A stretch of 64,000 bases of DNA. It comes from Lepidodermella squamata. Lineage: Eukaryota; Animalia; Gastrotricha. Each line of letters starts with the position of its first letter. Position 1 is the stretch's first letter. The notes below the pieces were generated by a model. The model saw nothing but the letters and a program-made list of their open reading frames with translations, was not told the origin of the DNA and ran no database searches. Below, piece after piece: positions 2,437 through 36,630 of the stretch. Location of the stretch: contig JBLDXI010000003.1 in NCBI GenBank assembly GCA_047495785.1, positions 248,001 to 312,000 on the forward strand. Reading direction: 5' to 3'. The position numbers were made by a program, and so were the translations under genes.

Positions 2437-2472
2437 GTCGCGATTAGCATCCTGATTCCTCATGACAATAAA

Positions 2473-7049: not shown

Positions 7050-7600
7050 TGGACTTTGATCCTGCAATACGGAAGCATAATGGTTGCACCACGTGATTTC
7101 AGGAAATCAATGACAGCTTGGTGAATATTATGGATTGCTTCGTCTAACGGTCCCGTAAGGAGATTCGCTTTCGCGTTGACATTAGCACCACGATTGACAA
7201 GCAGCTAGACGAGTTCTAGGCGGCCCCAAAAGGACGCATCCATCAATGGCGTTTCGCCGAAATCCGATCTTATGTCCACGTCTGCTCCTCGGTCGAGAAG
7301 CAGCCTCACTACAGCCGTGTGGTTGTTTCTTGTAGCCTATTGAAGAGCAGTATAGCTCTGTCCACGTGCCTCATCCCGGTTGACGACCGCGCCGTGGCGC
7401 CGTGAGTAGCAGCATAGTAGTAATCTCGAGATGTCCCCCTCCGGCAGCAACCCCCAGCGGCGTAACGCCGTAACGTTGCCTCTTGCGTCAACAGCTGCTT
7501 CACGATCGAGGAGCAACCGAACTATGTCCGTTAGGTTTTTCGCGGCAGCAATGTACAAACTCGTGAGCTGCATCTCGCCCTCCTGGCTGTTGACGTCTGG
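7050..7600 (-). pseudogene. Degenerate ankyrin exon of a fourth EGF-ankyrin paralog
   Basis: DVNSQEGEMQLTSLYIAAAKNLTDIVRLLLDR...ETPLMDAS...ELV*LLVNRGANVNAKANLLTG...AVIDFLKSRGAT, closest to 19245-20033. Frameshifts and stops; no upstream EGF exons seen. Confidence 0.85.
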
Positions 7601-7936
7601 CAGGCAGTACAAAAGAGGCAGAAAATTATTACAAGAAATAAAGTCTTCTTCTCCCATCTGCGTTTCCTCAAAATGGTATGAGAAAGATCGCGATAAGATG
7701 AAGAAAATCATCCTACTCCATAGGCTTAATTTTTATCGCTATATCAACGTCAATTACTGAACACTGAAAGAGAAATGCTATTATTTTATTGCTAGAAACG
7801 ATTCCTCACAATCCCTGCCCGCCAGCCCGTATAGGCTAAGTGAAGGTGGCAAAAAAGCGAGTTAGCAACAAGAAACTGAAGATTGAAGTGATAAATCTCA
7901 GATTGGGACAATCACCAGCCCGCTACTGCGAATTCC

Positions 7937-10900
7937 TTACTTCGCTCCTTCCAAAATATAAGGTGCTTTAGTAGCACCCCGTGATGCCAGGAAATCAATG
8001 ACAGCTTGGTGTTTGTTATGGTCCGCTTCATCCATAGCTCCTGAGCAGTCAAGCAACTTTGCGTTGACATTAGCGCCGCGATCGACAAGCAGCTTGACGA
8101 CGTCGAGGTAACCCATACTAGACGCTTGCATCATTGGCGTCTAGCCGAAATCCGCTGCTTTGTTTACCTCTGCTCCTCGGTCGAGAAGCAATCTCACAAC
8201 GGCCGTCTGGTTGTTTGCTGCAGCTAATTGAAGGGCAGTATTACTAAGTCCCCTTACTTCACCGTTGACGACTGCACCGTGATCAAGAAGCAACCTAACA
8301 ACGTCGATGTATCCCTTTTCCGCAGCTAACGCCAGTGGTGTAATGTCGTTAAAATTTCTTTTGTCAACATCTGCTCCTCGGTCAATAAGCAACCGCACCA
8401 TGGCGGTGAAGTTGCTCCCGGCCGCAATGAACAAACTCGTGAGCTGAAGTGAGTCGCTCTCCTGGCTGTTGACGTCTGCGCCGCGATCGAGCAATAGACG
8501 GGCAATTTCAAGTCGCTCGTCAAGCCTGCTATTGCAGTTGACGACGCGATGTAGTAACGTGGTGTTCCTTATCTGGAATGAGCAGTTGGTGTAAGTGTTC
8601 GGATCGCGTCGATTCGGATCGAACTTGATGCCAGTCGCCGTATCGATCTCACCAATCAGACGCCGCACGGCTGCGACGTCGGCCTCCTCACATGCTCTTC
8701 CAAGCCGCCTGTGAAGTTCGAGGTTTTCGTCAAACTGGGATTGGTAGAAAATTAAAAGCATAGACATAACAATCATTATGTAATAGAAATAACTAATAGA
8801 AACTAATGACTACTTTATCGATCAATCGCCTTCGAAGAAAAAGGTTTTTTGAAACTCCAATATCGATGGTCAAGGCACGTCGTGGCAAGGTACCATTATA
8901 CCAGCCCGCTTCTATCTTCCATTACTTAACTTCATTATACAGTGCTCCCTCGTTAGTGGCACCCTCCTTAAAAGAACTCCCTAGTTTGTAGACCGTAATT
9001 TTGGACCCTGCTAAATAAATTAGTTGTAAATTTTTAATGAAAGAAAAAATAATTATTTGATAGATTTAAATAATTAAGCGTGAACATATAAAATAATAAA
9101 GCGTTCCTAGAAACCTAGCGGCGCGTTGTCGTGGTTTTGAGAGATCCAGTTATTTCAAGTTTATTCCAAACGAGTTGAAAGATCAGCAGTGCATTAAGCT
9201 GTTCTTGTGGCTTTGAAATGACTTTGATTATGCAACAGAGTGTGTGGATTAGCTGCCACTCCAGTCGTCTTGTTTTTTTGTTAAACTTTTCCATCAGAAA
9301 TTACGCCAGTTTATCAGACAAAATCAGCAATTCATTTCAATAACTATAAAAATGCCCGTCAATCTTCTATCTCCTTGTTTTGCAGATTTTTCCTCACGTC
9401 AATTGCTGATCAACTAAAAGGCTCATCTGAATTGCCCTGATTTTTCATTTTTTAGCTTTCTCCCGGCCAGAAAATCTCTTGTCATTTACCAGCATTATTA
9501 GCATGATCAAATTGGGATATAAATCGTGTTTTTAAGGAAACTGAAACATCCTAATTTTGTTCCCAGCGGTGTTACGTAATCATGAAGAATCATGTCCTTG
9601 TTTTAAGATTTACTTTAATTTCGATACATGGATTCATTCTCATAAAATTAGACCGATTTCATTCGTTCCAGTTGTCCTGAGTTATTGGAATTATTAGCCG
9701 ATTTTCGATAGTCGATAGGCCTGATCTAACATGAAAATGGCTGCCACTACTCTACGATTTCATTGCTCAACGTCTTGGCAGTTTTACGGATTTTTTTCAC
9801 AACTTTTAATCATTCAATTTTGACTTTGAAAATCGCAACATCCCGAGGAGGGGCGGCGGGAGCTTCTGCCCGATTTTTTACCTTGTTCTGATCTTAATAG
9901 GCCAGTTGAATGAAAACGAGATCACGCCTGAGAAGATACAAATTTATTCTATTCAATCTAAACATCCTCTTGTTCCCTCTTCCCTCTTCACGGAACCACA
10001 CGCCTTATGCCTTGAAATCGGCCCGTGATTGCTCAATGCCATTAATTCGATGAATTTAAAAAAGAAAAATTCAGGTTAACCGCGAAAAAATTGTCGAAAA
10101 TACAATATTCATCCAAATTGTTTCAAATTTCATTTTTTAACTAATTCTACGAATTTTAGGCGAATTGAGTTCTGGATTGAACACTTGGAAAGAATGTTTG
10201 GCTAAATTTGTTGGTGATTTATTCAGAAGTATTCTGGTCAATCTTGACCGAGGTGATTGATTTTTTAAGCTGTGATTTCCAATGAATATTTGTTTGCGAA
10301 ATCGGACGAGCTTGGCATTTTTGAAGTAAATTGAAATGATGAGATTCCTGGTTTTTTTATTCTGAGTTCGTTATTAACCCCAGGCAGGACTTGAAATCAG
10401 AGTAAAAAACAAGGCCAACCAGTCAAATCAAAGCCGCCCTGGCAAATAAGAATTAAAACTTGGCGACGAACTTACAATTCATAGTGTTACTGTTTCACAG
10501 CCTTCAGCGAGCGAAATTTGTAATGACACGTAATCCGTGTCCGTCTCTTTCTGCGCGTTGGCATGCCAACTGTCTTAAGTCGTAGAAACGGTCTATTTTT
10601 AGCTTCTGCATTCAATTACAGCCCTCGTTATAGCTTTCCCTTGTTTAAAGACCGGGTCTGGCTCCCGACCCAGTGCTTTTATCGAGGGAGCACTGTATTT
10701 CGGGAGTTTCCTCTCGCGGAATGTAATTTAACGAAAATGTGAAGTAATTTCCCCAGGGTATTTGGTGAGTAAACTCTCGTGATTGTTTGAGCAACTGTAG
10801 CAAAATATCTATATTAGGTAAATAGAGCTTCATATTGTTAGAGAAATGAGCCTTTACACCAAAACATGACATTACGAAGCTCAACAAAATAAATAAACGT

Positions 10901-12851
10901 CTTCCAAAACTTACCAAGGCGCAGTTCGCTCCAAACCAGCCTCCCACACAAGTACAGGTATTTGGACCCGTACAAGAACCTTCATTTGAGCACCACTGCT
11001 CGCAAGAAGCTTTGAAGAAAAATGATAGTTAAACCAGGTGAGATAATAAATGTGTATTAGCGTGAACTCACGTTTGCTACAAATTGAATCACCCCTCCAG
11101 CCATTAGGACAAATGCAAGCGTTAGGTCCGTCGTAAGAACCTTTTTCGACAGTAAATATATTTTTCAGCGTTACTGTTCATATATTTTACTCGGTTTCTT
11201 GCTGAAAAATTGCATCAAGTCACATTGTTACGACGCTACAACCGTGCCCTGACTCACTTCACGCGCGCGAGCCGGATCCCTACTTCGAGCCTTCTCTTTG
11301 ATTTCTTTTTTTATTCGTCCAACTACCTCGTACTTCCTTCGTTTAACGTTTAACCGATAAACACAGTCACGCTCCATGCTCTCGCGCGCAAAGTGAGCCT
11401 GATTTTGGCGGGAAAAAACTAGCAATTGAAATAGTATTATGCTGTCAAAAAATTAATTTACTGTCGAACAAGGATTCGTGAGGTTCACCGCAGTATCCTC
11501 CATTTTCGCATGGTATATCGCAAAGTGCTGAAAAAGATCATAGTTAATATTGATCGCGGTCTCAATGTGATATAATGCGAGAATTGCCTGGATATGGAGT
11601 TCAAAGCGAAAAAACGAAACAGACCCCAATAGCTTTCTCAGTGGCAAAGAATTTGCTTAAAATTTGCTATTTTCTCTTGACAGGAGTAAAAAGTAATAGG
11701 TAAGCCCGTGACAAGCCCGTGACAAGCCCGTGACAGGACTTAGCATTTGAGGCCACGCAAAACGACAGACCTTTTTATACTTTTGAGTTATACGATGATA
11801 TATTGTGCTGACTCGAAGCTAAGTTGATGAAAGGTAATCGGCCCCAGATGGCGAGAAATAAGTCGCTGTTGTAGGAGATAGGCTCCACTGATGGTACAAT
11901 TCGTACAATTGCACATATCGCTCGCTAAAAAAATTCGTGCAACAAATTGTACACAATTTTTGACGTGAGCATATTTAGAAGCGGTCCAAAGACGACCATA
12001 ACTTCAATACTCTGTAATTGACGCTTTAATGCGGTAACTTTAACTCTAACTCTCTTTAACGCTTTAACTCTAAACTAAGGTGACATCGTAATATGATTTG
12101 AAGCTAATTTGTCCACCCGGTCAATACTTCAATTATTAGGATCGAATTTTCGAAAAAAAGAGCTACTACTGGATTTCGTATATACTTCTCAGAAAACCTT
12201 CTCATTTCCTTCTCAAACTAGGCCGAGTGGGGGAATGAGCCAAAATGGTACACTGCTTATGGGCAGGAAATGAGAAAATGGCGGAAACATACCTTCGCCA
12301 CAGTAGACTCCTGTCCATCTTCTCGGGCATTCACAATGATTGGGACCCACGCACGTTCCATTGTTTTGGCACGGGAGGTAGCAAGTAACTATAGCAGAAG
12401 AATTACAGATAGTTGAATATACTCAATGACATTGTTCGTGGCGCGATTTTTGTCTAGAACTTTACAGCGGAGTAAAGTTCGATAGGGCTGTACTCAGTGT
12501 TATTGCTGGGCTTCATGACTTACAGTCGCTGCAGTTAGAGCCCGTCCATCCAAATGAACACGTGCAGGCATTCGGGGCTTCGCAAAGCCCGCCATTTAGG
12601 CACTCCGGATGGCATATAGCTGTGCAAGAAATAGAGTTGATCAATGCATTGAAACAACATGCCACGTGCGTCCCCCGGACAGAGTGAAACTCACGAGTGC
12701 TACAGTCGGAACCAGACCATCCTTTCGTGCAAATGCAATAATTTGGACCAGAACAGTAGCCTCCGTTTAGACATGGCAGCGTGCAGATTCCGTCTACAGT
12801 ACCGTTCACAGTAGCCGAAGCCATGGCTGCAACCAGTAGAACGGAAAGCAT
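7937..12851 (-). CDS. EGF-ankyrin gene C: signal peptide + 5 EGF + ankyrin repeats; premature TAG at 8141-8143 (truncated allele or young pseudogene)
   Basis: Hand-spliced exons 12851-12695, 12619-12524, 12388-12293, 11527-11462, 11140-11072, 11009-10915, 8734-7937, all GT-AG and phase-compatible (total 1377 nt). Starts MLSVLLVAAMASA. The frame continues past the TAG into ORF 7937-8134. Confidence 0.8.
8940..10695. mobile_element. Non-autonomous Tc1/mariner-pogo superfamily DNA transposon (~1.76 kb) in the EGF5-ANK intron of gene C
   Basis: TA|cagtgctccctcg ... cgagggagcactg|TA. An inverted, diverged second copy lies at 48425-50203. Confidence 0.9.
11134..11480. mobile_element. MITE inserted inside the fourth EGF exon of gene C
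   Basis: Imperfect ~24-bp TIRs (gaacctttttcgacagtaaat / atttactgtcgaacaaggattc) and a degenerate ~10-bp target duplication (cggtgaacct / cgacggacct on the minus strand). Confidence 0.65.
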
Positions 12852-15835: not shown

Positions 15836-16124
15836 ATTAAAACCCCGAAACGTTCCCTGATAAGGCAAAAGGAGCGGTATCCTGAACAGTTACCGTAGTT
15901 ACCGAAATATAAGCCCTCCCTCGTTTAGAAGCCTAGGTAAAGTGAAATTCGTCGTTGCATAGTCCCATCTCGAATAGAAGCCTAGGCTACTACGGCACGT
16001 GCGAAACGCGTACTGAACGGTATTTAAAAACGGAAAACGCCTGAATAAATTTGACAATCTGCAATTTACGGTGATTTTTGTTGTAGCGTCCTAATGTTTC
16101 TTAATTTTCAGCTATTAGTCGACC

Positions 16125-17544: not shown

Positions 17545-20033
17545 ATGGCCCAGACGCTGCTATCCGTTCTAATAGTGCTAACCATAGCTGCTGCAACAAC
17601 AGCGAACAATAACAATACCCCAAACTGGAGTTGCGAGCAGCCATGTCGGAACGGTGGCTCATGCTCAGGTCCAAACTCATGCACTTGCCTGAATGGATGG
17701 ACTGGATCCGACTGCAACACTCGTTCGTTTTACTTGAACCAATTAGTTAGTAGTAACCCAATGTTTTCACAACTTTATTTATAATAAGAAATAACAAATA
17801 GTTATTTGATGATATTTTCTTATCAGAATATCTTTTAGCGGAACCAAATTTGACTGTAGCGGAACCAAATCCACATGTTGCGGAACCTAATTTTAGATAA
17901 GAAAAACGTCGATTTTCGAATATTTCCACGAAATTGAGGCAATTTATGAATTCTATAGTCAAGAATGCGTCTTATACAGAATTCAAAGATAATTTAATTT
18001 AAATTATGCCGAGCGATCATGACATCCTTAAAAGCTTCGAAAATGGGGTTTAGGCCCATTGAAAATTCCAAAATTTGGTTCCGCTAACCGGCAAATTTGG
18101 TTCCGCAACAGTCAAATTTGGTTCCGCTAAAAGTAAGACCCTTTTCTTATAGCAACATGCGACCCACCTTGTGAAAACGACGGTGTTTGCTCTGCACCCA
18201 ACACCTGCAACTGCACCGCCGGATGGACCAGAAACTCGAGTTGCAGCATAGGTGAGTTGGGCGCCGCATTTTACGTTGTTTGATCGACTATTTTCTTGCA
18301 CAGCTATCTGCATTCAGGAGTGCCTGAATGGTGGGTATTGCGAAGCTCCGAATACGTGCGAGTGCGAGAATGGGTGGACGGGACGTGATTGCAGCACCCG
18401 TAAGCCATAAAGGATTTTGAGATCTAAAATAGTTTGACCGATAATGACAACTTTTCCCAGCAACGTGCAATGGCTTACGTAGTTGCTCTAATGGAGGCAC
18501 CTGCGTAGCACCTGACACCTGTCGTTGTCCTGACGGCTGGAATGGTGACTCATTTTGTACAACACGTGAGCTTATACTAATGCATACAATATATCTATTG
18601 AATCGCTTGGTTTTATTTCACGCTTCTTGCTCTTCAAAGCTTCTTGCTCGCAGCCGTGTTTGAATGGAGGTTCTTGTACGGGTCCTAATTTCTGCGCCTG
18701 TGTTGGACGCTGGCATGGGCCAAGATGTGGCTTGGTGAGTTTTTGAAATCGCTTGCGCTTAAGTTTCGAGCGTAGCATCCAGCATCCAACGACGAAACAC
18801 CCATTGTAGATTTTAGTAACGGGTCAACTCAGCAGTCATGCTGTCATGCTGTCAAGCAGTCAGCAGTCGGCAGAATATGATTTTTCTTCGGATACTAGGC
18901 TCTTTAACAGGGTGCGATCTTGGATCTCGGAGCTGCCAGGGATGGACAATTTTTTGCTGTTTTTGCAAAAATGACTGGTCATTTCAATTTAAAAGCGAGC
19001 AAATCTAGAAAATTTGAAAGATTTTAAACACGCTTCCAAATCTCTTAAAATTTACGGAACAGTGGGATTAATTCTCATATTTTGTTGTCTGGCCAGGCCG
19101 AGCTGGGGGGACGATATTGCTCTTGAACATGAAGAGGAATTTTGTCCGCCCTAACAATTACCGATTGATCGCCTGCTTTTAATCCTTGTTGTTATCAAAT
19201 TTTAGTTCAATTCTATCTGAGCTCATTTTTCTTATAATTTGCAGGTTAATCCATACTTTGAACAATACCTGCGGCTCGGTCAAGCCTGTGTGGACGCCGA
19301 CGTCGGAGAAGTCCGGCGTCTAGTCGGTGAGATCGATACGGCGACAGGAGGCAAATTCGACCCGAATTGGCGCGATACGAACAGATACGCTAGCTGCTCA
19401 CACCAGATAAGGAACGCCACGTTACTGCATCGCGTCGTCAACTGCAAGAACAGGACCGATGAGCGACTCGAAATCGTCCGCCTGCTGCTCGATCGAGGCG
19501 CAGACGCCAACAGCCAGGAGGGCGACTATCAGCTCACGAGTTTGTACATTGCGACTGCGAACAACCTCACGGATATAGTTCGGTTGCTTCTCGAACGTGG
19601 AGCAGCTGCTGACAAAAGGGAGGATTTCGGCGCTACGCCGCTTGTAGTTGCTGCTGAAGAGGGATACCTCGAGATTGCTGCTATGTTGCTTGATCACGGC
19701 GCGGCCGTCAACGCTAAGACAGGTGGAAAGACTGCCCTTCATTGGGCTGCAGAAAACAACCACATGGATGTAGTGAGGCTGCTTCTCGACCGAGGAGCAA
19801 ACGTGGAAGCGAAAACGGATACCGGTAAGACGCCATTGATGAATGCGTCCAGCAGGGGGCGCCTCGAACTCGTTAAGCTGCTTGTCGATCGTGGAGCCAA
19901 TGTAAACGCGAAAGCGAATCTCCTTACGGGAGCTCTGGACGACGCTATCTATGCCAATCAGCAAGCTGTCGTTGATTTCCTGAAATCACGGGGTGCAACT
20001 AAAGCGCCTTATACTTATGATGGAGCAAAGTGA
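17545..20033 (+). CDS. EGF-ankyrin gene A: signal peptide + 5 EGF + ~6 ankyrin repeats, 453 aa, no TM segment
   Basis: Exons 17545-17722, 18153-18251, 18304-18399, 18461-18565, 18640-18734, 19245-20033. All GT-AG; intron phases 1,1,1,1,0; total 1362 nt, open. Signal MAQTLLSVLIVLTIAAA; EGF pattern C..PC.NGG.C..PN.C.C..GW.G..C. Confidence 0.9.
17831..18133. mobile_element. MITE in intron 1 of gene A
   Basis: Arms made of repeated gcggaaccaaattt / aaatttggttccgc. Confidence 0.75.
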
Positions 20034-22140: not shown

Positions 22141-25100
22141 ATGGCCTGGATGCTTCTTTCTGTTATGTTGGTCGTACCCATAGTCCCGGCTGCAACTGTG
22201 AACAATACTCAGAGCTGGAACTGCACGATACAATGCCTGAATGGAGGCAACTGCTCCGACTCGAATATCTGTACTTGCCCGGAAGGATGGACTGGTTACG
22301 ACTGTAGCACTCGTGCGTTTTACCGAAATCAAACTCATTTTCTCAGCAATCGATTATGCATATACATGTTCAAAACCACTGAGCTTAAGCTCTCTCTTTT
22401 TTTAATATCCCTTCTGGAGTTTTTTATATAGTTTTATATTGCTTTCTTTTAGCATTTTGCTACACTTGTCAAAACGGCGGTGTCTGCGTTGCGCCCAACA
22501 TCTGCAACTGCACCGTTGGCTGGGACACCGGTACGGGTTGCGATCCGTGCCCGAGTGGGTGGACGGGATATAACTGCACCACCTGTAAGTCTCGAAGCTG
22601 ATTTTCCTGAAATACTTTTGTGGCGCGATAGAAATAGTTTATTTGTGACTTGTTGCCCTGCGAGCTGTACTCTCACCGGGCCTACCTCAAGGGATCGGCA
22701 GCGAAGCCCAATTCCGGGCCCCCTTAGGCGGCCCCCAACAATGATGCGCACTCAGAGGGTAAAAATGGACTTGAGCTCAAACGCCTAGTCGAAGTTATTG
22801 TAAATTAAATTTTTGAAAGGCCTGATGTCGAAAGGCTAGTTTTGACTTTCCAAATTCCCGATTCCGCGAAGGTCAGACGATTCCCTATCGATTGGATATG
22901 TTGCTATCGCGCCGATTTTTTCCGTAGTCTGACCGTAGTAATTTCAGTAGTTTTTCCGTAGTTTTTCCGTAGCGCTAATTTCTACTGTAGAAGCAGCAAA
23001 TACGGTTAAAAATATCAAAAAATACATAAAAAATGCAGTGAGGGGGCGCAGTGAATCGAACCACCAATACTGACTTGTATATTAAATCAACCATGCCCCC
23101 CAATCAATTATGCCACACACTACTTTACAGAGTAGAATGCGTTTAACGGGCTGATCTCCTTGAGGATATATGAAATACATACCTATTAGAATCAAGGTAA
23201 GCATCGGAAAATGGGAGGATGTAAGGTGAAAAGATTAGAGCGCGCCACTGTTATGACACTGTTTAACGGTTGTGACGCGTCAAAAACGCCAATTTGGCTC
23301 AACGGCTCAAAAAGTACTGTATTTTCAGGGGTGTTTTGCGGCCAATTTTCAATGCCAGGGAATCTTTCCTTCGGGTTCTAACCATGACAATCGCATAGAG
23401 CGCCCTCAGTTCCATGATCCCCAGAGATTTCAAGCCCCCGGGCGCCACTGTTTAGCAGTTGTGACGCGTCAAAAACGCCAAATTTTCGCAAGTGATCGCA
23501 TTTTGGGGTGACTTTGCGGCCAATTTTCAATGCCAGGGAATCTTTCCTTCGGGTTCTAACCATGACAGTCGAATAGAGCGCCATCAGTTCCATGATCCCC
23601 AGAGATTTCAAGCCCCCGGGCGCCACTGTTTAGCGGTTGTGACGCGTCAAAATCGCCAAAACCGCGCTCCCCGACTTTATCCGGGAAATTTTACCTCAAA
23701 CTGCCCCCGCCACTTCAGTGTAGTTTTCGACGTTCATTCCCGACGAGACAATGACGTCTTCAATTGAAAATAGTTTGATAAATTCATTTTCAAAGTATCT
23801 GGCACATATTTTGTTTAAGTTTTCTTACCGTAGTACTTGCCGTAGTTTTTCCGTAGTTTTACCGTAGTGCTACGGAAAAACTACGGTAGAAATCGTATAT
23901 AGTGAAAAAATTAAGGGAAAAATTTCTACGCACCTCTCAGGTTTCGAGAAGCGAATGCGCGCTCACCCGGCGCCCAAAATCTAAGTTGCGCATAGGGTAA
24001 ACATTTTTTCATTCATTTTTTTCCCGCGATGACACCGAATTCAATCGATAGAGAATTGTCTGAATTGTTATTTGCTTGAATAAAAACCGAAGTGATGTTT
24101 GAAAGTATTTCTTTAACATCTTCGCGCGCAGTATCAAGTGGGTTAAAAATCATGACTTGACCAGCGCGTATTAGTCGCATTAAGGTTAAATTTGCGAAGA
24201 ATTCTTTCGCGCCACAACCGATTTCGATTCATAAAAACGTTGCATATGACGTTGCATATTTTCCGAATATAGATACGTGTGATGGAGGTTGCTGGAATGG
24301 AGGTACATGCAAAGGTCCTAATATTTGCGTATGCAAGAGCGGATGGACGGGTGAATCTTGTTTTTTTGGTAGGTTCTCTTTTAGTTTTTACTGCAGGGCC
24401 GTCGCTCCGGTTTTCAGAGACGCTTCTGATGGCTTCGTCCAGGACAGTTACCAGCTGCCCCTTTATTTTCATACTTTGTATCTGAATTCAATTAGGGTTG
24501 AAGATACTTTGATTCCCTTACTTCCTTACAATGCTGGAAAAATTGTATAATCTATGCCATTCGATCCTTCTTGTTTGTCACTTGTAATCAGTGCTTCTCA
24601 ACCTTTCCCCGTATTGGGCAATTTTCTAACTCATTTTCCATGCCTGCGGGCCGCATGACTTGGGCCCTCGCCGGCGGGCCGCATTTTTATAATGTAAGCA
24701 AACAACAAATATTATTGCTGTTTAGTTGCCATGAAATTTGAAACACAAAAAATTCAACAAAAATTGGGCATTCATGGGTAGGTGTTGAGTATGTACTAGG
24801 AATTATCAAATAAGTATCATGAGAAAGTTTGATGAGCTAGCAATGCCGTTTCATCTCATCGCAAATACAGGGAGTCCGTAAAGTCATAGAGGCAATATAA
24901 ATATATAGCATAGTACATTATATAGCAAGGGAAAAATCGATAATCTAGCATTTTTTCTGGATCGTATAATAATAATAATGTACGAACCAGGCGAACACCA
25001 TGAAAAACCAGGTTGCTTTTACCGAATTCTCACCGGAAAACAGCGATATCATTCTAGTCATGACAGTAGATTCCTTCTTTTTTGTAGCCAAAGTGATTTT

Positions 25101-28100: not shown

Positions 28101-31100
28101 GCAAGGTGGATCGCGTGTTTTTGATTCACATCGACCCAACCTAGACGGCGTCTTAATGGTTCGGGATCAGCCAAGGGATGTGCACCGCAAATGACACGAA
28201 TGGTCCGATCTTGAGTTGATTGCAATTTGGCTAGCGAACTCGGCGCTGCCTGACCCAGCGTGATGTCACCGTAATTCAAATGACTAAACACAAGCCCGTT
28301 GGCCATCATAATCGCCGTCTTTCTATCGACAAACTTGACGGCCAAGCGAAGGGCGTAGAGCCCTCTTCTCGCCTTGCTCTTGGCACTCCTTATTTGTTTC
28401 TTGAAGGTGAGTTTGTCGTCGATGATAAATCCGAGAGTTATCATTTCATTTGACGGTTGGACAACCGCATCGCCGATAGTGATAGCGAAGTTTGGAGCCG
28501 AAGGAACGGCGCACTTGAGTATCATTGTATCTTGAGTAGGTCTGATTGTATCTGCGACCAAAGCCAAGGCTTTTCGGCCGCCAAAAATGCCGGCGAAGGA
28601 TAAAGTTTGCGGAGCACTGCCCGGACAAAAAAGTTTGAGTAAATTAACATTGTAAATTCCTGTATTCTTGTGTAAATTGCAGTTTATTTTGGTATTTTCA
28701 TGTAAGCAGATCAGGAACCAGCTCAGCGATCCGGAATTCAGCGTTGTAAAACAGGGTGTTTCGATTTTCGGCCGAGAAACTTCATGGAAATTCGGGTAAT
28801 CCCTGAAATTCGGTCATGTAAACTCATGGATTTTCGTCCTTAAGTTATTTCTTCGATGTATTTCAATGGAAGCTGAACGAGTTTTCGACTGGAATATCCT
28901 CACATGATTTTACATCCGGAAAAAGACGTTGTATTCTCATGTAGGAAGATCGATTGAATAAAAAATGGGTGTTGCTATTGGCACATAATTATGTGCCTCT
29001 TATTGGCTATTGGCACATACATTATGTGCCTCTTAATGGCTATTGGCACATAACGCTAATTTCAATTTTCGATGTTTTAGAAAGTCACGCATCGAAATGT
29101 TCAACGAGTATTGATATTAGGGTTTTCGTCAACGGGGAATCGAATGGCGATATCGAAATTGCAGTCATGGGCCCGCAAATCGGGGTATCCGTCATCTAAT
29201 GGGTAGCCCAAGTAGAGTATCTGAAGTCTATCGCACAGTTACGTGAAATCCGACGATTCCAGTGAATTCGCCGCCCTTAGATTGCTAATGCAACGTTGAA
29301 ATGCTGTTATCTGGGAATTAAACTCCCGAAAAAAGCAGTTGAATGAAAAATGTTATGTGCCAATAGCCATTAAGGGGCACATAATGTATGTGCCAATAGC
29401 CAATAAGAGGCACATAATTATGTGCCAATAGCCACACCGATAAAAAATAAATAAATTTTGAAAATGCAGCCGATAATACCCTCATTTTACTGCTCGAATT
29501 TTCAAGTCTGAGCCGCAATTGACTTTACATGAAATTACACGATCGGAAATTTCACGGAATTTCAAGGGAACTTCGGTTCATTGTATTTCTGGAGAAATCA
29601 GAGTGGTTACACGAAAATACACGGAGTAAAAAAATGAGAAATACTGGCAATTTTTAGCTCAAAAATCACCGTGTAAATTCACGTAGACTGGTTGTGTAAA
29701 TAACGATTCGATAAGTAGCAAATTTTTGACAAATTGCAGGTAAGCTTCGGAGGAAAACAGAATTTAGGTGAGTTTCAATTACGCCAAAATGTTAAAAATT
29801 CGGGCGTGTGGAATTTTGTTGAGTGTTAAGGCGGCTCAAAATCGTAGTCAATTATTGGGACGATTTTCGAAAAATGACATAGACGAGTGCGCCGATTTTT
29901 ATATGATTTTTATATTTCAGGTGAAATCCCCGTAAATTCAGTAAATTTGGTTACAAATTCAGCTGGTTTTCAAACCTGACTGAAAAACCTGAATTTTCTC
30001 TGATTTTGCTGTTCCGCGTTTAAAATTTTTTCAAAATCCGATCATAGTTCGGCAATATTACTCTGAAATGTTGTGTTTTCAATCTCGCGCCCCCGAGCTA
30101 CTCTGCCTTATTCAAGTTTTTCAGCGACTAATAATTGCAATAAAACCTACCAAAAAAAATCACCCATTTGGATAGAAAAAACACGTTAAATGTGAGGAAA
30201 TTTGGATGAGAGAATAAACAAGCTATCGCTAAAATTTGATAATTAGTTGTTTAATTACCGTATTTTACGAATTATTACGCAGGACCCAATTATAGGGCAG
30301 AACCGGAATAAAGGGCAGAGGGTAATGGTCATTTGAAACAATAAAGGGCAGAACCGTATTAATAGGCAGGGCCTTGTATGAAGTGACTTCAATGAGCGCC
30401 TGCTGACTTTGGATAGGTTGCGATTTTTCGTAATTTTTCGGTAAGTGCACTAATGGTCCTTTATCCATCTTAATCCACTTGAACAAATACTTCACGCGTG
30501 TATAGTCACAGGTGGACGGCAGTAGCTATAGTGGTTATTCGGCGGTTGTAACTGTTCACCTAGGTACTCTTCAGGTGACTGATTAAGTTCGAAAAATTAG
30601 AGTGCAGAGCCGAAATACAGGGCAGAACCTGAATACAGGGCAGGACTTGAACCTCGTTTGAAAAAATGCAGGGCAGGGTCTTATAATTCGTAAAATACGG
30701 TATTTCAATTCTGGGTCAATTCGTCCGCGGTTAAGTCGTCCAAAATGGCCCCAAATTTACTAACAAATGTTTATTTCGAATTGGAAAAATAAAACAATGA
30801 AAATTTTGAATAAATTTAGAATACATTTTTCTCGAAAATGTCTAAATTTGCAGGTAAAAGTGCCAAATTCAAAATAATTTTTATAACGTCCTGGCAGGCA
30901 AAATCGCTATCATAATTGTCATCAAACATTTTATTTATCTGTTAAAAATTGAAATGAAACATTTTTCGATGAGCAATTTCACACAATTCGAATGCGCTTA
31001 AACCTTGAGGTAGAATTTAAATTTAAATTTTTATTATAATTTACATTAAATTTCGCGAATTACATAAAATTTAAGGGCTAGCTATTCATCGATTGCGGAC

Positions 31101-34100
31101 AGAAATGAGCAAGCCCCTACAAAATGTACATGCTGTCTTAAAAAAATCCTTCTAAATTCGTAGTGAGAGAAATAGGACCGAAGAAAAATGTAAAAAAATT
31201 GAAAATAAAAACAATTTTAAATAACGCGCTGACCATTGTTACGTGACATCTGGCACGTGCGCCTTAGGACAAACTAAGTGGAGTGAGAGCCACACAGTTA
31301 ATCGCGATTTTTTTCGTCGTTTCAAATCAGGTCAATTTGTTATTTCATGCAGCTCGCTTTTTGATTGAACAAACAGGCCGGCCGACCTCGTTTCGATTGC
31401 GTGGTGCGAAGTCAAAGGTGAGCAGGTAAAGCAATTTATTCTCGAGATTTATTTACTGTCCGCTTTGGTCGTTCTTTAGCTATATTGGCCGCGCCAGATC
31501 AAGCCCGGGACTTTCAGCAATTCGATAATATCAATTTCACGAGAACTATTCCGCGGCTATTCAAGCCGCCAGTCGATGCCATCTTAACCATTCTACCTGA
31601 GTAAGTAATAATTTTGCCAGGTAAATGACTAAAACTAAATGCAACGTAGATAACATCTTCTACGATATAGAATTAAACAGGCCATCCCTGTCATTAGCAG
31701 TTTTTTTCTCGAAACCTTGGGTTTTATTTTGAAAATTTGTCATCGTCATCGTAACTACTTGGACCGTGGATTAAAAATTATTTTCAGGATTTTAATTTAT
31801 AAATTTCAATGTAATTTTCAATTTATTAATTTCAATTTAATTTTAAATTTCGAAGCTATTTTAGCTAGAAAATGTTATCTCCGCTAAATTATGTTTATCG
31901 ATAAAATTAAGAGGGCTGTGATCGAAAGAGTAATAAATTTGTTATAAATTTATTTTTTGCTTATAACGCTAATATAAATCGCTCGCGCTAAGTTTTATGT
32001 GCAGCAAAAAAATACTGTGATTTTTTGCTGCTGTTTGAGTTCTAATATTCTCTTACGTTATTCACGTCATTTGGGTCATTTCCTTCATTCATAAATTTTG
32101 ACATTGCGCGCAGAGGTGAAACACTGCCCTCGCGGTCTGCATAGCCAATGGCCTCAAGACGACGTTCCAATTCTTTTGTTGAATCTGGAAAGCTAGTTTT
32201 TACCATTTTTCTCAAGAAAATAATCGTGATACAAAAACTACCAAAAGCTAACTCGATTTTCAATCCGCCAATAGCCGCATTTTTCGTGTCACAAACTACA
32301 TGTATGCTGATGCCTTTCTTTTGTGATTTTAATCACAAACGAGTTTTCCCCAGCTTGAAAAATTTACCCTCTCACGCCTTATTTGGCATAATATTGAAGT
32401 GCCTCGTAAAAAGCTGCCATTTCGAATGATGCAATAGCTAGATTTCAAGTCATCGAATGATTGTGGAATTTGCCAAAGGAGAAAAATATTTCTCAGGGGT
32501 AATGCCAGCTACTATAGCTTCTTAATCTGCTAAGAAAGCTGTTAGATACCAGTTAAAAGGTAACAGGTGTGCGATGAAATTGAATGATAACACTCAATCT
32601 ATCATATATTTTGAAACTCGTGATTCGATTTACCGGTTTATCGAAAACGATCTGCTGAAACTAGTGATAATGACTGTAGTAAAGAATGCAATTGAAGCAG
32701 CAGAATAGGCAGAATAGGCAATAATATAGCACCAACAATAAAAAGTTTACGATAGATTTTTTTTCTGTGTCACACTATAACGTCATTATAATGTTGTTAT
32801 AAATCTTATTTATGTACGATCACAGCCCTCTAATTTAAATAAAAAAATTAGAGATGAATGACTATGCACACAAATGCTGCAAAACATGCAGAAATTAAAA
32901 AAAAATAGCCCAAAATTTAAAGCACTTCCCAAAATTCTTAAAAATTATTTCCAAATTTAAAAAAAATGTTATAATTTGGATTTAAAAATAAAAAATGTGT
33001 GTTTGCATGTAACAAGATCCTTTCTGATTTTTCAGACTATTACTGATTTTTCCCAGCAAAATTTGCCATTTCTTCAACCATAATTCGTTTTCAAGTTTTT
33101 CTATTTAAAAAATGGAAACCTCTCAAAATTCCTTCTGCGTAATAATTGAATATTAGATGAAAATATCATTCTATAGCGGTATTTTTCATATTTTTTCCAA
33201 TAAAAAATCAATTTATTCGAGGAGGGCAAAAATCTGAAAAACTTGTTTCATTTTTGCATAATTTTCATTTAATTTTGACTTTAAATTCCTTCAGTTTGTA
33301 AGCAATGGCCTCAATTTCCGCGATCTTCTCGAATATCCTGAAACGTGGTCAGTTGAATCCACCATAAATTTATTTTATTCAAGTTTTTACTTTGTCCGCA
33401 TTTTATGTCACGTCGTTGATCAAACCCGAAAACAATCAGCAATATGAAAGTAAGAAGACTCCGACAATTTTAGAGAAAATTAAAACACTTTGAGACAGCG
33501 TTTTACCCAAAATTAACAACAATTTAAAAATAATTGCATTTAAATTTTGTTGCTTGAGGCTTGAGGAATCATTTTGGCGGATTTTGTCATTCCATTCAGT
33601 TGAACTTTCAATTTTCAGAGATTTCGCACAAGATCGGCGAAGTAAATGTCCTGATGCTGCTGCTGATTTTGAAATTCAGGTGATCAAACGTCGATGTCAT
33701 ATTGCTACTACGACTACATTTTCGGTTACTTTCAGCTGAATCCTGTTGCAACCATGAGCAGAAGCTGTTCATTTTAGGCTGAATTCCTGGCTGTTCTGGA
33801 AACGCCTCATGGTTCGCATGTTAGGGCAAAAGATGCGCCAAAGAGATGACAATAAAATAACGATTTTTCTCCATTTTTGTGCTTTTCGCGAAATCTCTGA
33901 AATTTGATATTTTCATGAAAAATGCCGTTGATGTGAAAATCGTCATTTCTGTGGAAATTGGTATTTTCATGATCTTTTCATGCTGCCATTTTTGCGCTTA
34001 TCGCACCAGTTTTCACGATTTTTCTCCCATTTTATCGAATTATGTGTGAAAAATGTGTTTTCCTACATTTTGCTGTGCCTGTGGTTACACGGAATTACAC

Positions 34101-36630
34101 GATGTTCCTCGAGTTTTTGTGCCATTTTCGCGCAGTCTGTGTGAAAAATGCTATATTTTTGAGCCATCTCCCTGCGCTTCCACGGAATTACACGGAGTTG
34201 TGAGTCTGGCTGATTTCGCCGGAAACGCTGGAAAAACTTGTCTTGACTTGCTTTTCTCGGCTGAATCTTCTTACATGAGTTACAACGGCGAAATGTCGTT
34301 GGAAACTTAAGTTTGACGATTCAGCTGGGAGAAGCAAGTCAAGACAGGTTTTTCCAGCGTTTCCGGCGAAATCAGCCAGACTCACAACTCCGTGTAATTC
34401 CGTGGAAGCGCAGGGCGAACGGCGGCCAATTATGGTCTAAATGTAAATTCGTGTGAGCTGAATCAATAAAATGATCATGTAAATTCATAGGACTCGTTAC
34501 CATTTCTCCCTCATTTTACAGCAAAATACACGGACGTGTTTTCACCCCATTTACACGAGTTTACAACATGAAACTTTTTAGTCCGGGTGGTTTACTGTAT
34601 TCTATATCAAAAGTTTAAATATGTTTTTTGCAGCAATTTGCGATCCAGCCTGCGATAACGGATACTGCAGAGCGCCTAACACCTGCAGTTGCCATGATGG
34701 TTGGAAGGGCAATTCAGTTTGCAGCAAACGTAAGCTCGCAAATGTTACTATTGGCTCACTTTTTTCCCATCGCTATTCTTTCAAGCGACCTGCGCGCAGC
34801 CGTGTTTAAATGGAGGCTCCTGCACATGGGCACATACCTGCACTTGTATGGGAGGCTGGTTTGGAGAAAGCTGCGACTCAGTAGGTTTTATGACATCGTT
34901 TCCGGGGATTTCCTAAAATTCGTGTCCTATCAGTAACATACAGGCAGACGGGAGTCTCACTTCAAATTCTCAGGAGGATGAAATATGAGAATATAAATAT
35001 TTTTTAACAATTTTACTGCCGAAAATAAACTGCGAGATCCCCTGGCGTTCGAAAATTTCTGAAAAACGCAAGGGTCCCCCCCTGTTGATTTTCAAATTTT
35101 GGTCTTAAAATGCTCGATTTACCCCCTCAGAGCTGGATCTAGTCGGAACCCTGTGTAGATCCAAATACTGGGTCTGTCAAAATGTCCTTTTTCGGGTCAA
35201 AGATGCGTCGCAGGGCAAAATGCCTGACGGCAAAGTGTAGGCCGTGACCCGGCGGTTCTTTTGACACCAAAATTGGAGACACAAGGTCTGGGCAGGTTTT
35301 TGAAGATGAATGTGAAATAACGAAAGTTTGGATTAGAGCCAAAAATCAGACCCAAGAATTGGACCTAATTATTAGACCCAGATTATGGCGCAACAATCAA
35401 AATTGCCGGAAAATGTGTAAATTTTACTATTTTTACAAGTTGTTTTCTGTGCGTTCCTTGAAGTATTTAGCCCCAAGTTTGGTGTCAAAAGAACCGCCGA
35501 CCGTGGCCTACACTTTGCCGTCAGGCATTTTGCCCTGCGACGCATCTTTGACCCGAAAAAGGACATTTTGACAGACCCAGGATTTGGATCTAAATATCGA
35601 ATCTCGCAGTCTATTTTCGGCAGTACACATGTTAATGGGGTTAAGCCAATCCGGAGATATTTGGCCAAGCCGTGTAAAATACCGAAAATGACCGAGCCAG
35701 CCACTATCGGGTTTTTCTTAAATTTTCGGTATATTTGGGGTGAAGAATGGAAATTTCTCCCGCTAGGCTTCGAAAAATATCTACTTTAGTACAAAAAGTA
35801 AATTCTTTATGTCTAAACTTTCCCGTCGATTTCAGTTCGATGAAAAGCTCGAAATGTACAGGTGGCTTGGACAAGCATGTGAGGACGCCAACGTCGAAGC
35901 TGTGCGTCGAATGATCACCGAGATCGACACGGCGAGTGGAGGAAAATTCGACCCGAACTGGATCGACCCTAACCTATACACCAACTGTACATTCAAGATT
36001 AGGAACGCCACGTTACTGCATCGCGTCGTCAATTGCAAGAACGCGTCCGATGATCGGCTTGAAATCGTCCGGCTGTTGCTCGATCGCGGCGCAGACATCG
36101 ACACTAAGGAGGGCGACTCGAAGCGCACGATTTTGTACATTGCGGCCGGGAACAACTTAACGGCCATAGTTCGGTTGCTTCTCGACCGTGGAGCGAATTT
36201 AAGTCTCTGGAGTTTTCAAAACCTTTCGCCAATGGGGATAGCAGCGGAAAGAGGATCCACAGGCGTTGTTGCTTTGCTGCTCGATTACGGCGTGGATATA
36301 AACGGTGAAGTAGGCGAGCTCGAGAATACAGCGCTTCATATAGCGGCTATGAACAACCAAACGGCTGTTGCGAGGTTGCTGCTCGACCGAGGAGCAGACG
36401 TGAACAAGGAAGCGTTTTTCGGCTACACGCCACTTCATTCGGCATCTATGGATGGGCACCTCGACGTCATCAAGCTGCTTATCGATCGCGGTGCTAATAT
36501 CAACGCAGCGTCAGCCGACAATTCAGGACCTCTGGATTGGGCGAACTTTAAAAAGCATCCAGCTGTATCCGAATTCCTCAAATCGCGTGGTGCAACTTTG
36601 GCACCCTTCATTGCTACAGGAGCTAAGTGA
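22141..36630 (+). CDS. EGF-ankyrin gene B: signal peptide + 5 EGF + ~6 ankyrin repeats, 461 aa, with a ~10.3-kb TE-filled third intron
   Basis: Exons 22141-22312, 22453-22584, 24273-24368, 34634-34729, 34786-34880, 35836-36630. All GT-AG; phases 1,1,1,1,0; total 1386 nt, open. Same layout as gene A. Confidence 0.8.
23260..23660. repeat. Tandem ~178-bp repeat (~2.2 copies) inside a ccgtagt-rich element (~22910-23890)
   Basis: gttgtgacgcgtcaaaa...gccaattttcaatgccagggaatctttccttcgggttctaaccatgaca...agagatttcaagcccccgggcgccactgtttagc repeated. Confidence 0.8.
24589..27230. mobile_element. Non-autonomous hAT element
   Basis: TIRs cagtgcttctcaacct / aggttgagaagcaccg; 8-bp TSD cttgtaat / cctgtaat; gcgggccgc subterminal motifs. 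Confidence 0.85.
24868..26785. mobile_element. TA-flanked Tc1/mariner-type non-autonomous element nested in the hAT
   Basis: ~80-bp TIRs: TA|cagggagtccgtaaagtc...aaaatcgataatct / agattatcgattttt...gactttacggactccctg|TA. Confidence 0.85.
27560..28570 (-). mobile_element. 5'-truncated LINE (CR1/L2-group-like): C-terminal end of RT ORF2, 3' UTR and (TAAA)n tail
   Basis: ORF 27815-28567 has LGFIIDDKLTFKKQI...SHLNYG...KLQSTQDRTIRVI...WWNQLP; (ttta)n tail at 27562-27581. Confidence 0.88.
28968..29437. mobile_element. Nested MITE with repeated tattggcacata arms
   Basis: ~85-bp inverted arms at 28968-29054 and 29352-29437. Confidence 0.8.
30258..30700. mobile_element. Nested pogo-like MITE
   Basis: TA|ccgtattttacgaattat ... 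ataattcgtaaaatacgg|TA. Confidence 0.8.
31903..32836. mobile_element. Nested MITE
   Basis: gagggctgtgatcg / cgatcacagccctc termini. Confidence 0.65.
34170..34415. repeat. Near-perfect foldback (~100-bp arms, ~50-nt spacer)
   Basis: ccctgcgcttccacggaattacacggagttgtgagtctggctgatttcgccggaaacgctggaaaaac... is mirrored at 34318-34415. Confidence 0.85.
35156..35592. mobile_element. Foldback MITE in the EGF5-ANK intron of gene B
   Basis: ~115-bp inverted arms gatccaaat.ctgggtctgtcaaaatgtcctttttcgggtcaaagatgcgtcgcagggcaaaatgcctgacggcaaagtgtaggcc; TA flanks. Confidence 0.85.

What the first reader, a model, noticed from the sequence alone, without database searches (positions are those of the whole stretch)
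7050..36630. Clustered family of predicted secreted EGF(5)-ankyrin(6) proteins: Notch-like domain pairing without a membrane anchor
Seen in sequence: three genes (A 17545-20033 +, B 22141-36630 +, C 12851-7937 -) share one design. A signal-peptide exon leads into five EGF modules joined by phase-1 introns, then a phase-0 intron into a single ~790-bp ankyrin exon. The fifth EGF exon is 95 nt in all three and meets the ANK acceptor in frame each time. No hydrophobic TM segment, LNR or RAM lies between EGF5 and ANK (A: ...GPRCGL|VNPYFEQY...). A fourth ANK relic sits at 7050-7600. Established: ankyrin repeats are overwhelmingly intracellular, and the classic animal EGF+ANK protein, Notch, separates the two with a membrane. 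Inference: a lineage-specific exon-shuffled family placing an ankyrin binding scaffold outside the cell (secreted effector, immune binder or Notch/Wnt decoy). I do not recognise it as a described family.
Basis: partly seen in the sequence, partly recalled or inferred. Interest (0 to 1): 0.9.

Follow-up and report, generated by a model that had tools for sequence, protein, structure and literature searches.

The report
Secreted EGF-ankyrin gene cluster
An unidentified small animal carries a tandem cluster of genes, at least one of them transcribed and spliced, that put an export signal and five EGF modules directly in front of an ankyrin-repeat domain with no membrane span, so a binding module that normally works inside cells is most likely sent outside the cell.

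Summary
Genes A (17545-20033 +) and B (22141-36630 +) splice into intact 453- and 461-residue reading frames. Each has an N-terminal signal-like segment, five EGF modules on phase-1 exons, a 95-nt last EGF exon, a phase-0 intron and one ankyrin exon. Gene C (12851-7937 -) has the same plan but carries an in-frame stop in its ankyrin exon. The piece at 7067-7597 is a dead relic.

Transcript-like contigs of a public run begin and end exactly at A's exon borders and stop 16 nt after an AATAAA. The EGF5-to-ankyrin joint itself was not displayed.

The same two-exon cassette, with the same acceptor positions and phases, recurs at eight or more other loci on six or more contigs. Two of those have introns of about 155 nt, too short to hide a membrane-span exon.

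The ankyrin exon carries a family-specific N-cap found at 150 or more places in this 121-Mb genome. The cluster is therefore one branch of a genome-wide set of ankyrin mosaics joined to extracellular modules. This scan has already noted that set on other DNA of the same genome.

There is no specific link to Notch. Export rests on sequence rules only, and the function is unknown. I found no published description.

The parts
17545..17722 (+). Gene A exon 1: start codon, signal-like hydrophobic segment, EGF1; ends in phase 1
   Evidence: A transcript-like contig lies on 17544-17686 and carries 30 unlike letters upstream. The AG just before the ATG is therefore used as an acceptor.
18153..18251 (+). 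Gene A exon 2: EGF2 (99 nt, phase 1-1)
   Evidence: An X1 contig piece lies on 18153-18249, with 66 and 30 further letters that do not lie on the flanking introns. Pfam EGF_2/EGF hits.
18304..18399 (+). Gene A exon 3: EGF3 (96 nt, phase 1-1)
   Evidence: Pfam EGF_2 scores 28.8 bits, above its 22.1 cutoff; EGF_PEAR1L scores 34.8.
18461..18565 (+). Gene A exon 4: EGF4 (105 nt, phase 1-1)
   Evidence: Pfam EGF scores 28.1 bits, above its 21.5 cutoff.
18640..18734 (+). Gene A exon 5: EGF5 (95 nt, phase 1 to 0), the ANK-proximal EGF of the conserved cassette
   Evidence: The acceptor position is the same (5 nt before the first Cys codon) in all 10 loci compared.
19245..20033 (+). Gene A exon 6: ankyrin domain (N-cap, five internal repeats, C-cap) and stop codon
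   Evidence: Pfam Ank_2 E 2.8e-63. An X1 contig lies on 19244-19753 with 54 letters ahead of it that are not intron. Depth in bin 19110-19290 equals that contig alone.
20034..20247 (+). Gene A 3' UTR, with AATAAA at 20226-20231
   Evidence: An X1 contig piece ends at 20247, 16 nt after the hexamer.
22141..22312 (+). Gene B exon 1: start codon (in-frame TAA just upstream), signal-like segment, EGF1
22453..22584 (+). Gene B exon 2: EGF2 fused to a partial EGF (132 nt, phase 1-1)
24273..24368 (+). Gene B exon 3: EGF (96 nt), followed by a 10.3-kb intron with repeats
34634..34729 (+). Gene B exon 4: EGF (96 nt)
34786..34880 (+). Gene B exon 5: last EGF (95 nt, phase 1 to 0)
35836..36630 (+). Gene B exon 6: ankyrin domain and stop
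12695..12851 (-). Gene C exon 1: start codon, signal-like segment, EGF1
12524..12619 (-). Gene C exon 2: EGF2 (96 nt)
12293..12388 (-). Gene C exon 3: EGF3 (96 nt)
11072..11527 (-). Gene C EGF4, split into 11527-11489 and 11140-11072 by a 348-nt insert with GT..AG ends; the frame is kept if the insert is spliced out
   Evidence: Whether it is spliced is not known.
10915..11009 (-). Gene C exon 5: last EGF (95 nt, phase 1 to 0)
7937..8734 (-). Gene C ankyrin exon, with a premature in-frame stop at 8141-8143; the frame is otherwise open to the normal stop at 7937-7939
7067..7597 (-). Dead partial copy of the ankyrin exon (no N-cap, stops and frame breaks)

Best explanation
A, B and C are local tandem duplicates of one gene type. 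It encodes a cleavable signal peptide, a short rod of five non-calcium-binding EGF modules and, joined directly to the last EGF, a roughly seven-repeat ankyrin solenoid.

Shown:
- the exon design
- intact frames in A and B
- use of several of A's exon borders and of its poly(A) site in RNA
- conservation of the EGF-to-ANK splice cassette at many dispersed paralogs
- purifying selection on both halves

Inferred:
- The protein enters the secretory pathway, so the ankyrin domain folds in the ER lumen and ends up outside the cell or in a secretory compartment.
- There the ANK groove acts as a protein-binding module held on an EGF stalk, making the product a soluble adaptor or recognition protein.
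- The family-specific N-cap, with a near-invariant N-x-T sequon and a conserved Cys pair, looks like an adaptation to that compartment.

Status of the copies: A is the working copy. B is intact but was not seen in RNA. C is probably a recent pseudogene or a truncated allele.
For: Gene models: A and B have intact, all-GT-AG frames.

Phases: exon lengths fit EGF exons with phase 1-1 and a last EGF exon with phase 1-0.

RNA: X1 contigs lie on 17544-17686, 18153-18249, 19244-19753 and 19839-20247, each with unlike letters beyond the exon borders. Depth in bin 19110-19290 (4.53) equals 17.5 x 47/181, so the last 134 nt of intron 5 have no RNA cover. AATAAA sits 16 nt before the contig end.

Cassette elsewhere: 11 of the 30 closest N-cap ANK exons (12 counting L007, whose EGF exons lie 7.3 kb upstream) have an EGF exon upstream. 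The acceptor position is the same, the exon is 95 or 98 nt in most copies and always ends in phase 0, and the ANK acceptor is phase 0. One copy inserts a 41-nt Thr/Pro-rich linker exon that keeps the frame. Two copies have introns of about 155 nt, full of stops.

Extracellular neighbours: another paralog reads ANK-CCPx3-EGFx3-ANK.

Hydrophobicity: only residues 1-20 are hydrophobic. B has an in-frame TAA just before its ATG.

Selection: dN/dS is 0.25-0.33 for the EGF part and 0.38-0.50 for the ANK part.

Sequons and Cys: the ANK exons of A, B and C carry 15 sequons against about 5 expected from composition. N-cap ANK exons have about 7 times the sequon density and 3 times the Cys density of the kinase-linked ANK arrays in the same window. 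The N-cap alignment shows a near-invariant T59 and C67.
Against: - The EGF5-to-ANK joint (18734 to 19245) was not among the joints listed; only the acceptor's use and 54 unplaced letters were seen.
- X1 is only guessed to be RNA by the tool. I infer it from the exon-limited pieces.
- No signal-peptide or topology predictor was available, so export rests on hydropathy and the -3/-1 rule read by eye.
- A's exon 1 is spliced to something upstream, so a longer N-terminus is not strictly excluded for A.
- The three Cys in the ANK domain are an odd number.
- No positive selection was found on the canonical binding face (0.47-0.84 against 0.34-0.47), so a recognition role has no direct support.
- B exons 1-2 have no X1 cover, and C carries a stop.
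- The sequon comparison uses only two cytoplasmic arrays.
Confidence: 0.65

Rival explanations
1. The protein is exported from the producing cell but does not act in the animal's own extracellular space. Either it is stored in a secretory organelle, or it is delivered into the cells of another organism (prey, host or symbiont). In the second case the ankyrin domain would work in a foreign cytosol, as bacterial ANK effectors do.
For: - ANK repeats work almost entirely in cytosol. Papers that use the phrase 'secreted ankyrin' concern pathogen effectors.
- Latrotoxins, which are ANK-rich venom proteins, are among the best solved-structure matches.
- The family is large, clustered and turning over, with a relic and a stop-bearing copy.
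Against: - Disulfide-rich EGF and CCP modules, a mucin-like linker exon, conserved sequons and a conserved Cys pair fit a protein that stays in an oxidising compartment.
- The organism and its way of life are unknown here, and no delivery domain was seen.
Confidence: 0.15
2. The N-terminal hydrophobic segment is an uncleaved signal anchor. The protein would then be a type II surface protein displaying EGF and ANK on the cell surface rather than a soluble one.
For: The hydrophobic core is the only membrane-compatible segment, with a KD19 maximum of 1.8-2.1. The n-region has no charge. Earlier notes on this genome describe surface-tethered ANK proteins (not tested here).
Against: The h-region is only about 13-15 residues and is followed by small residues (A/T-x-A) and a polar stretch, which fits a cleaved signal peptide. 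This is a reading by eye; no predictor was run.
Confidence: 0.1
3. The architecture is an artefact of reading. The EGF exons and the ankyrin exon would belong to different transcripts, as the MisPred rule assumes when extracellular and cytoplasmic domains occur together without a membrane span.
For: MisPred rule 2 treats this combination as a sign of misprediction (PMC3927609). The joint itself was not displayed. B and C have an in-frame ATG a few codons upstream of the ANK acceptor.
Against: - A's ANK exon has no in-frame ATG for about 150 codons, and its acceptor is used in RNA.
- Phase compatibility is kept at all 11 loci, which are only about 50% identical.
- The A exon 5 bin has RNA depth of the size expected if the 54 unplaced letters lie on its last 54 nt.
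- Two paralogs have introns of about 155 nt with no other exon.
Confidence: 0.07
4. The cluster is decaying, non-functional DNA, and the transcript of A is noise.
For: One relic, one copy with a stop and a split EGF, a 10-kb repeat-filled intron in B, and B not seen in RNA.
Against: A and B keep 453- and 461-codon frames and all twelve splice-site pairs at dS 0.5-1.2, with dN/dS well below 1. A is spliced and polyadenylated.
Confidence: 0.03

Closest known systems
Notch receptors (diagnostic domains LNR/EGF/ANK, PMC2770060)
   Same: EGF repeats and ankyrin repeats in one polypeptide, N-terminal signal peptide, modules on shuffled exons.
   Different: No LNR, no membrane span and no RAM, so ANK is on the same side of the membrane as EGF. 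The EGFs are EGF_2/PEAR1L/teneurin-type rather than calcium-binding Notch-type. The ANK is consensus-type, and no Notch chain appears among the 60 best solved-structure matches.
Other ankyrin mosaics of the same genome that share the N-cap ANK exon (ANK-CCP-EGF-ANK, coiled-coil-EGF-ANK; earlier scan notes on Sushi-ANK, protease-ANK and lectin-ANK)
   Same: Same N-cap motif, same phase-0 acceptor, same ANK-proximal EGF exon of 95/98 nt, and no membrane span between the extracellular modules and ANK.
   Different: A, B and C form their own well-supported clade (96/93). Their N-terminal half is simple (signal peptide plus EGFx5) and their ANK array short (about 7 repeats), whereas other members have up to about 550-residue arrays, CCP modules or mini-exon repeats.
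Latrotoxins (spider venom proteins with long ANK arrays)
   Same: Ankyrin repeats in a protein that acts outside the producing cell; they are among the best solved-structure matches (7ptx, 9goa).
   Different: To my knowledge latrotoxins have no signal peptide and no EGF modules, and they carry N-terminal pore-forming domains. No such domains occur here.
EGF-rod proteins of the tenascin/teneurin/PEAR1-MEGF type
   Same: Runs of short six-Cys EGF modules with the pattern C-x3-C-x-N-G-G-x-C-x2-P-N-x-C-x-C-x2-G-W-x-G-x2-C, each on its own phase-1 exon.
   Different: Those proteins end in fibrinogen, YD-repeat or transmembrane parts, never in ankyrin repeats.
DARPins (designed ankyrin binders)
   Same: Consensus-like ANK repeats with N- and C-caps, used as binders outside cells; many appear among the top solved-structure matches.
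   Different: DARPins are man-made. Here the scaffold would be a natural, glycosylated and possibly disulfide-stabilised version. Binding has not been shown.

Membership tests
Notch receptor | LNR (Notch) repeats between the EGF region and the membrane | tested here: not met
   The whole coding sequence of A and B is accounted for by signal segment, EGF exons and ANK exon. Pfam scans of the exons give only EGF-type and Ank families. There are no extra family exons in the introns.
Notch receptor | Single membrane span separating EGF (outside) from ANK (inside) | tested here: not met
   No 19-residue hydrophobic window outside residues 1-20. Hydrophobic stretches in the last introns lie in pyrimidine tracts or a high-copy repeat and are not shared between copies. 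Two paralogs have introns of about 155 nt.
Notch receptor | ANK domain specifically related to Notch ANK | tested here: not met
   The 60 best solved-structure matches are ankyrin-1/2, NOMPC, DARPins, latrotoxins, TRPA1 and others; none is Notch.
Ankyrin repeat superfamily | Tandem 33-residue repeats matching the Ank profiles | tested here: met
   Ank_2 E 2.8e-63 (A), Ank E 6.4e-35 (B), Ank_2 E 4.7e-27 (C up to its stop).
EGF-like domain (EGF_2 / EGF) | Six-cysteine pattern and a profile score above the curated cutoff | tested here: met
   The six-Cys pattern occurs in all modules. A exon 3 scores EGF_2 28.8 against 22.1, and A exon 4 scores EGF 28.1 against 21.5. The other single exons score just under the cutoffs.
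This genome's N-cap ankyrin mosaic superfamily | ANK exon opening with the motif Y-x-x-L-x-x-A-C ... E-I-D-x-A-T-G-G-K-F-D-P-N-W-R-D-P ... N-x-T-L-L-H-R ... C, entered by a phase-0 acceptor | tested here: met
   150 or more matches in the genome. Alignment of 23 copies. Acceptors are phase 0 in all 11 copies checked.
This genome's N-cap ankyrin mosaic superfamily | Extracellular-type modules and an export signal upstream, with no membrane span | tested here: met
   EGF upstream at 11-12 of 30 loci. CCP modules in L040. A Thr/Pro linker exon in L006. A signal-like N-terminus in A, B and C. The signal was judged by hydropathy only.
Secreted protein (classical pathway) | Cleavable N-terminal signal peptide and actual export | not testable with these tools
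   No SignalP or DeepTMHMM and no proteome data were available. There is only the hydropathy maximum at residues 1-20 and small residues before a polar stretch.

The most novel reading that the evidence does not exclude
This animal has turned the ankyrin repeat into a general extracellular binding scaffold. It would be adapted by a special N-cap with a glycan site and a disulfide, and shuffled onto EGF, CCP, lectin and protease modules. The EGF-ANK genes would then be soluble recognition or adaptor proteins of that system, a natural counterpart of DARPins and a parallel to LRR-based recognition families.
Probability: 0.3. Interest if true: 0.85.

Novelty: new variant of a known kind. Interest (0 to 1): 0.62.

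Why it matters
Ankyrin repeats are treated as an intracellular module. Quality-control rules for gene models even flag ANK next to extracellular domains without a membrane span as an error (MisPred rule 2, PMC3927609). A transcribed, conserved gene family that breaks this rule has three consequences:

- The rule is not universal.
- It offers a natural test of whether ANK solenoids can fold, be glycosylated and bind in an oxidising compartment.
- It points to an unexplored set of extracellular binding proteins in one animal lineage.

It also bears on how domain pairs such as the EGF+ANK of Notch can arise by exon shuffling. It does not imply any kinship with Notch.

Tried and rejected
Protein searches:
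- The A ankyrin exon returned only generic ANK proteins at 50% identity or less, none with EGF.
- The same search limited to the N-cap found 89 candidates and two weak hits. The species and close kin are apparently not in that collection.
- A profile of 23 N-caps against 1.84 billion representatives was swamped by long ANK arrays matching only profile positions 50-95. It says nothing about relatives in other organisms.
- The Atlas look-up returned generic ANK clusters.

The count of EGF-ANK loci therefore rests on the 30 best matches plus twenty 10-kb stretches.

Spliced leader: the nematode SL1 pattern is absent from the genome, so the 30 letters spliced in front of A's ATG remain unidentified (5' UTR exon or another leader).

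Reads: the single read-laying run listed only the 15 best-supported joints, all in repeats. The exon joints of A, including those that contig 2 must contain, were cut from the list.

Selection: the test for diversifying selection at DARPin-type binding positions was negative or inconclusive.

Hidden membrane-span exon: rejected.

Notch kinship: rejected.

Literature: searches for 'extracellular ankyrin', 'secreted ankyrin' and domain-combination terms found no description of such animal proteins.

Not done:
- Structure prediction of the full spliced protein, because a spliced sequence has no reference and I did not type it.
- Identification of the organism.
Full report
**What is in the sequence**

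The window is eukaryotic DNA of about 41% G+C. Three open ankyrin exons lie at 19245-20033 (+), 35836-36630 (+) and 8734-7937 (-). Their Pfam Ank hits range from E 1e-27 to 1e-63. A six-cysteine EGF pattern search finds five modules ahead of each of the two plus-strand exons and four ahead of the minus-strand one. C's fifth module is split and was found by eye.

Reading the DNA and assembling the exons gives two intact frames:
- Gene A: 17545-17722, 18153-18251, 18304-18399, 18461-18565, 18640-18734, 19245-20033. This is 453 aa.
- Gene B: 22141-22312, 22453-22584, 24273-24368, 34634-34729, 34786-34880, 35836-36630. This is 461 aa.

All splice sites are GT-AG. The internal EGF exons are 96-132 nt and phase 1-1. 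The last EGF exon is 95 nt (phase 1 to 0) in A, B and C, and the ANK exon is entered in phase 0.

**Corrections to the observation**

- B's second exon is an EGF fused to a partial EGF.
- C's fourth EGF is interrupted by 348 nt. The insert has GT..AG ends, and removing it keeps the frame and the six cysteines.
- C's ankyrin exon has an in-frame stop at 8141-8143, where B has a tyrosine codon. The frame then runs open for 67 more codons to the normal stop. C is therefore a recent pseudogene, a truncated allele or a sequencing-level variant.
- The fourth copy, at 7067-7597 (-), lacks the N-terminal third and has stops and frame breaks.
- tblastn of protein A against the window finds no further family exons in B's 10.3-kb intron or between the genes.

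**Is the EGF-to-ANK join real?**

Four lines of evidence bear on this.

*(1) RNA.* One public run (X1) gave contigs that lie only on A's exons with no mismatches. A second run (X2) gave contigs colinear with the genome, introns included.
- The X1 pieces are 17544-17686 (30 unlike letters upstream), 18153-18249 (66 and 30 further letters), 19244-19753 (54 further letters upstream) and 19839-20247.
- These ends coincide with the predicted borders of exons 1, 2 and 6.
- The depth in bin 19110-19290 (4.53) equals 17.5 x 47/181. That is the ANK contig alone, so the last 134 nt of intron 5 have no RNA cover.
- The remaining intron cover coincides with a repeat that has thousands-fold depth in the DNA run.
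- The last piece ends 16 nt after an AATAAA at 20226-20231.
- A is therefore a spliced, polyadenylated transcript.
- The table of joints was cut to the 15 best supported, all in repeats, so the joint 18734-to-19245 was not displayed.
- The exon 5 bin has the depth expected if the 54 unplaced letters lie on its last 54 nt. That reading is consistent, not unique.

*(2) Coding logic.* A's ANK exon has no in-frame ATG for about 150 codons, so it needs upstream coding exons.

*(3) Comparison within the genome.* The first 100 residues of the ANK exon match 150 or more places in the 121-Mb assembly.
- Of the 30 best matches, 11 have an EGF exon just upstream on the same strand. These include A, B and C, and they lie on contigs C3, C43, C85, C60, C66 and C32.
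- A twelfth (L007, on C42) has its EGF exons 7.3 kb upstream.
- In ten of the 11 copies compared, the EGF exon starts 5 nt before the first Cys codon, is 95 or 98 nt long in most and ends in phase 0 in all, and the ANK acceptor is phase 0.
- In the eleventh (L006, just upstream of the window), the last EGF exon ends in phase 1. A 41-nt exon coding a Thr/Pro-rich linker restores phase 0.
- These copies are only about 50% identical in protein, so the frame compatibility has been maintained for a long time.
- In L011 and L021 the intron is about 155 nt and full of stops, which leaves no room for a membrane-span exon.

*(4) Selection.* Pairwise dN/dS among A, B and C is 0.25-0.33 for the EGF half and 0.38-0.50 for the ANK half, at dS 0.5-1.25.

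**No membrane span**

The only 19-residue hydrophobic window in A and B is at residues 1-20. Hydrophobic stretches in the last introns sit in pyrimidine tracts or in the high-copy repeat, and none is shared between copies. The C-terminus is polar (…G-A-K), so a GPI signal is unlikely.

**Export**

- The N-termini of A, B and C differ in sequence but all have a 13-15 residue hydrophobic core. It is followed by small residues and a polar, sequon-bearing stretch before the first EGF cysteine.
- B has an in-frame TAA directly before its ATG, so the methionine is the start there.
- In A, an upstream exon or leader is spliced immediately before the ATG.
- I could not run a signal-peptide predictor.

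Indirect signs that the ANK domain lives in the secretory pathway:
- The ANK exons of A, B and C carry 15 N-x-S/T sequons against about 5 expected from composition.
- Across 20 N-cap ANK exons, sequon density is about 7-fold and Cys density about 3-fold that of the two kinase-linked, presumably cytoplasmic, ANK arrays in the same window (small control sample).
- The N-cap alignment shows an N-x-T before L-L-H-R with its Thr near-invariant, and a Cys pair of which the second is 90% or more conserved. One copy has lost both cysteines together.
- Other paralogs place the same ANK exon behind CCP modules and a mucin-like linker.

**What it is related to**

- The EGF exons score best with EGF_2, EGF, EGF_PEAR1L and teneurin-type models.
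- The ANK domain matches consensus-type repeats (ankyrin-1/2, NOMPC, DARPins, latrotoxins). No Notch chain is among the 60 best solved-structure matches.
- Notch is defined by LNR/EGF/ANK with a membrane span (PMC2770060), and LNR and the span are absent here. The Notch likeness is only a shared pair of domain types.
- A tree of 23 N-caps puts A, B and C in one clade (96/93), with B and C as sisters, so they arose by local duplication. EGF-linked copies occur in both halves of the tree, interspersed with copies that lack a nearby EGF.

**Relation to the rest of the scan**

Earlier notes on this genome, which are AI notes and leads only, list many apparently secreted ANK mosaics. They include signal peptide + EGFx4 + ANK, ANK-CCP-EGF-ANK next to this window, and Sushi-, lectin- and protease-ANK genes. 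My own checks confirm the neighbouring EGFx6-linker-ANK gene, an ANK-CCP-EGF-ANK gene and the mini-exon-EGF-ANK type. The present cluster is therefore one branch of a genome-wide phenomenon that the scan has already met on other DNA.

**Function**

The function is unknown. My best guess is a soluble protein that binds a partner through the ANK groove and is spaced or oligomerised by the EGF rod. I found no excess of replacement changes at DARPin-type binding positions (0.47-0.84 against 0.34-0.47 for the framework). An immune-type arms race is therefore not supported by these three genes.

**Novelty**

Large protein searches found no relative with the N-cap or with EGF+ANK, but they were dominated by generic ANK, and the species seems absent from the collections. 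Full-text searches found no description of extracellular or secreted ankyrin proteins in animals beyond latrotoxin reviews and pathogen effectors. The combination violates MisPred rule 2, which treats it as a prediction error (PMC3927609). I rate it a new variant of a known kind: a mosaic secreted protein built by exon shuffling, unusual in what it exports.

Noticed in passing
window 2473-4230 (+): Intronless 585-aa amidase ORF (Pfam Amidase, E 2e-57). The nearest named relatives are bacterial (Bacilli, Ruminococcus, Myxococcaceae) at about 30% identity. Two unnamed proteins from public run assemblies are 45-47% identical. It may be a gene acquired from bacteria.
   Followed up: partly
window 5152-5784 (+): Fragment of a DDE_1 (pogo/Tigger-type) transposase ORF.
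   Followed up: no
window 17824-18130 and 18748-19109: High-copy repeats inside introns 1 and 5 of gene A, with DNA-run depth of about 1,700-9,000 against about 45 for single-copy sequence. The first has 21-bp subrepeats in inverted orientation, like a MITE.
   Followed up: partly
window 27815-28567 (-): A 250-aa ORF inside B's 10.3-kb intron. By eye it looks like the C-terminal part of a LINE reverse transcriptase, but it gave no Pfam hit at E 0.001.
   Followed up: partly
window 35150-35580: A long inverted repeat (MITE-like) in B's last intron, seen by eye in the sequence.
   Followed up: no
window 19291-19466: In the DNA run, one contig at depth 65-78 (single-copy depth is about 45) differs from the window at 12 clustered positions in the N-cap of gene A. 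It could be a close paralog missing from the assembly, a divergent allele or a gene-conversion tract.
   Followed up: no
L040:1900-4200 (-), genome C85:117600-127599: A gene reading ANK, three CCP/Sushi modules, three EGF modules, then the N-cap ANK exon. L034 (C42) has near-identical EGF exons 7.3 kb from its ANK exon.
   Followed up: partly
L038:7900-8330 (+) and L047:2900-3300 (-): Upstream of the single EGF exon lie several mini-exons of about 45 nt, each coding a variant of E-L-A-K-L-(R/N/S)-S. They look like a coiled-coil or stalk built from repeated exons.
   Followed up: no
window 42193-43158 (-) and 57306-58088 (-): Kinase-linked ANK arrays with near-identical 34-residue repeats, almost free of sequons and Cys. 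I used them here as a cytoplasmic comparison. They are the subject of other notes of the scan.
   Followed up: partly
window 17544/17545, 22133-22141, 12851-12864: In A an acceptor lies directly before the start codon, and RNA carries 30 foreign letters there. B and C have an AG 5-9 nt before their ATG. This could be a short 5' UTR exon or a spliced leader. The nematode SL1 is absent from the genome.
   Followed up: partly
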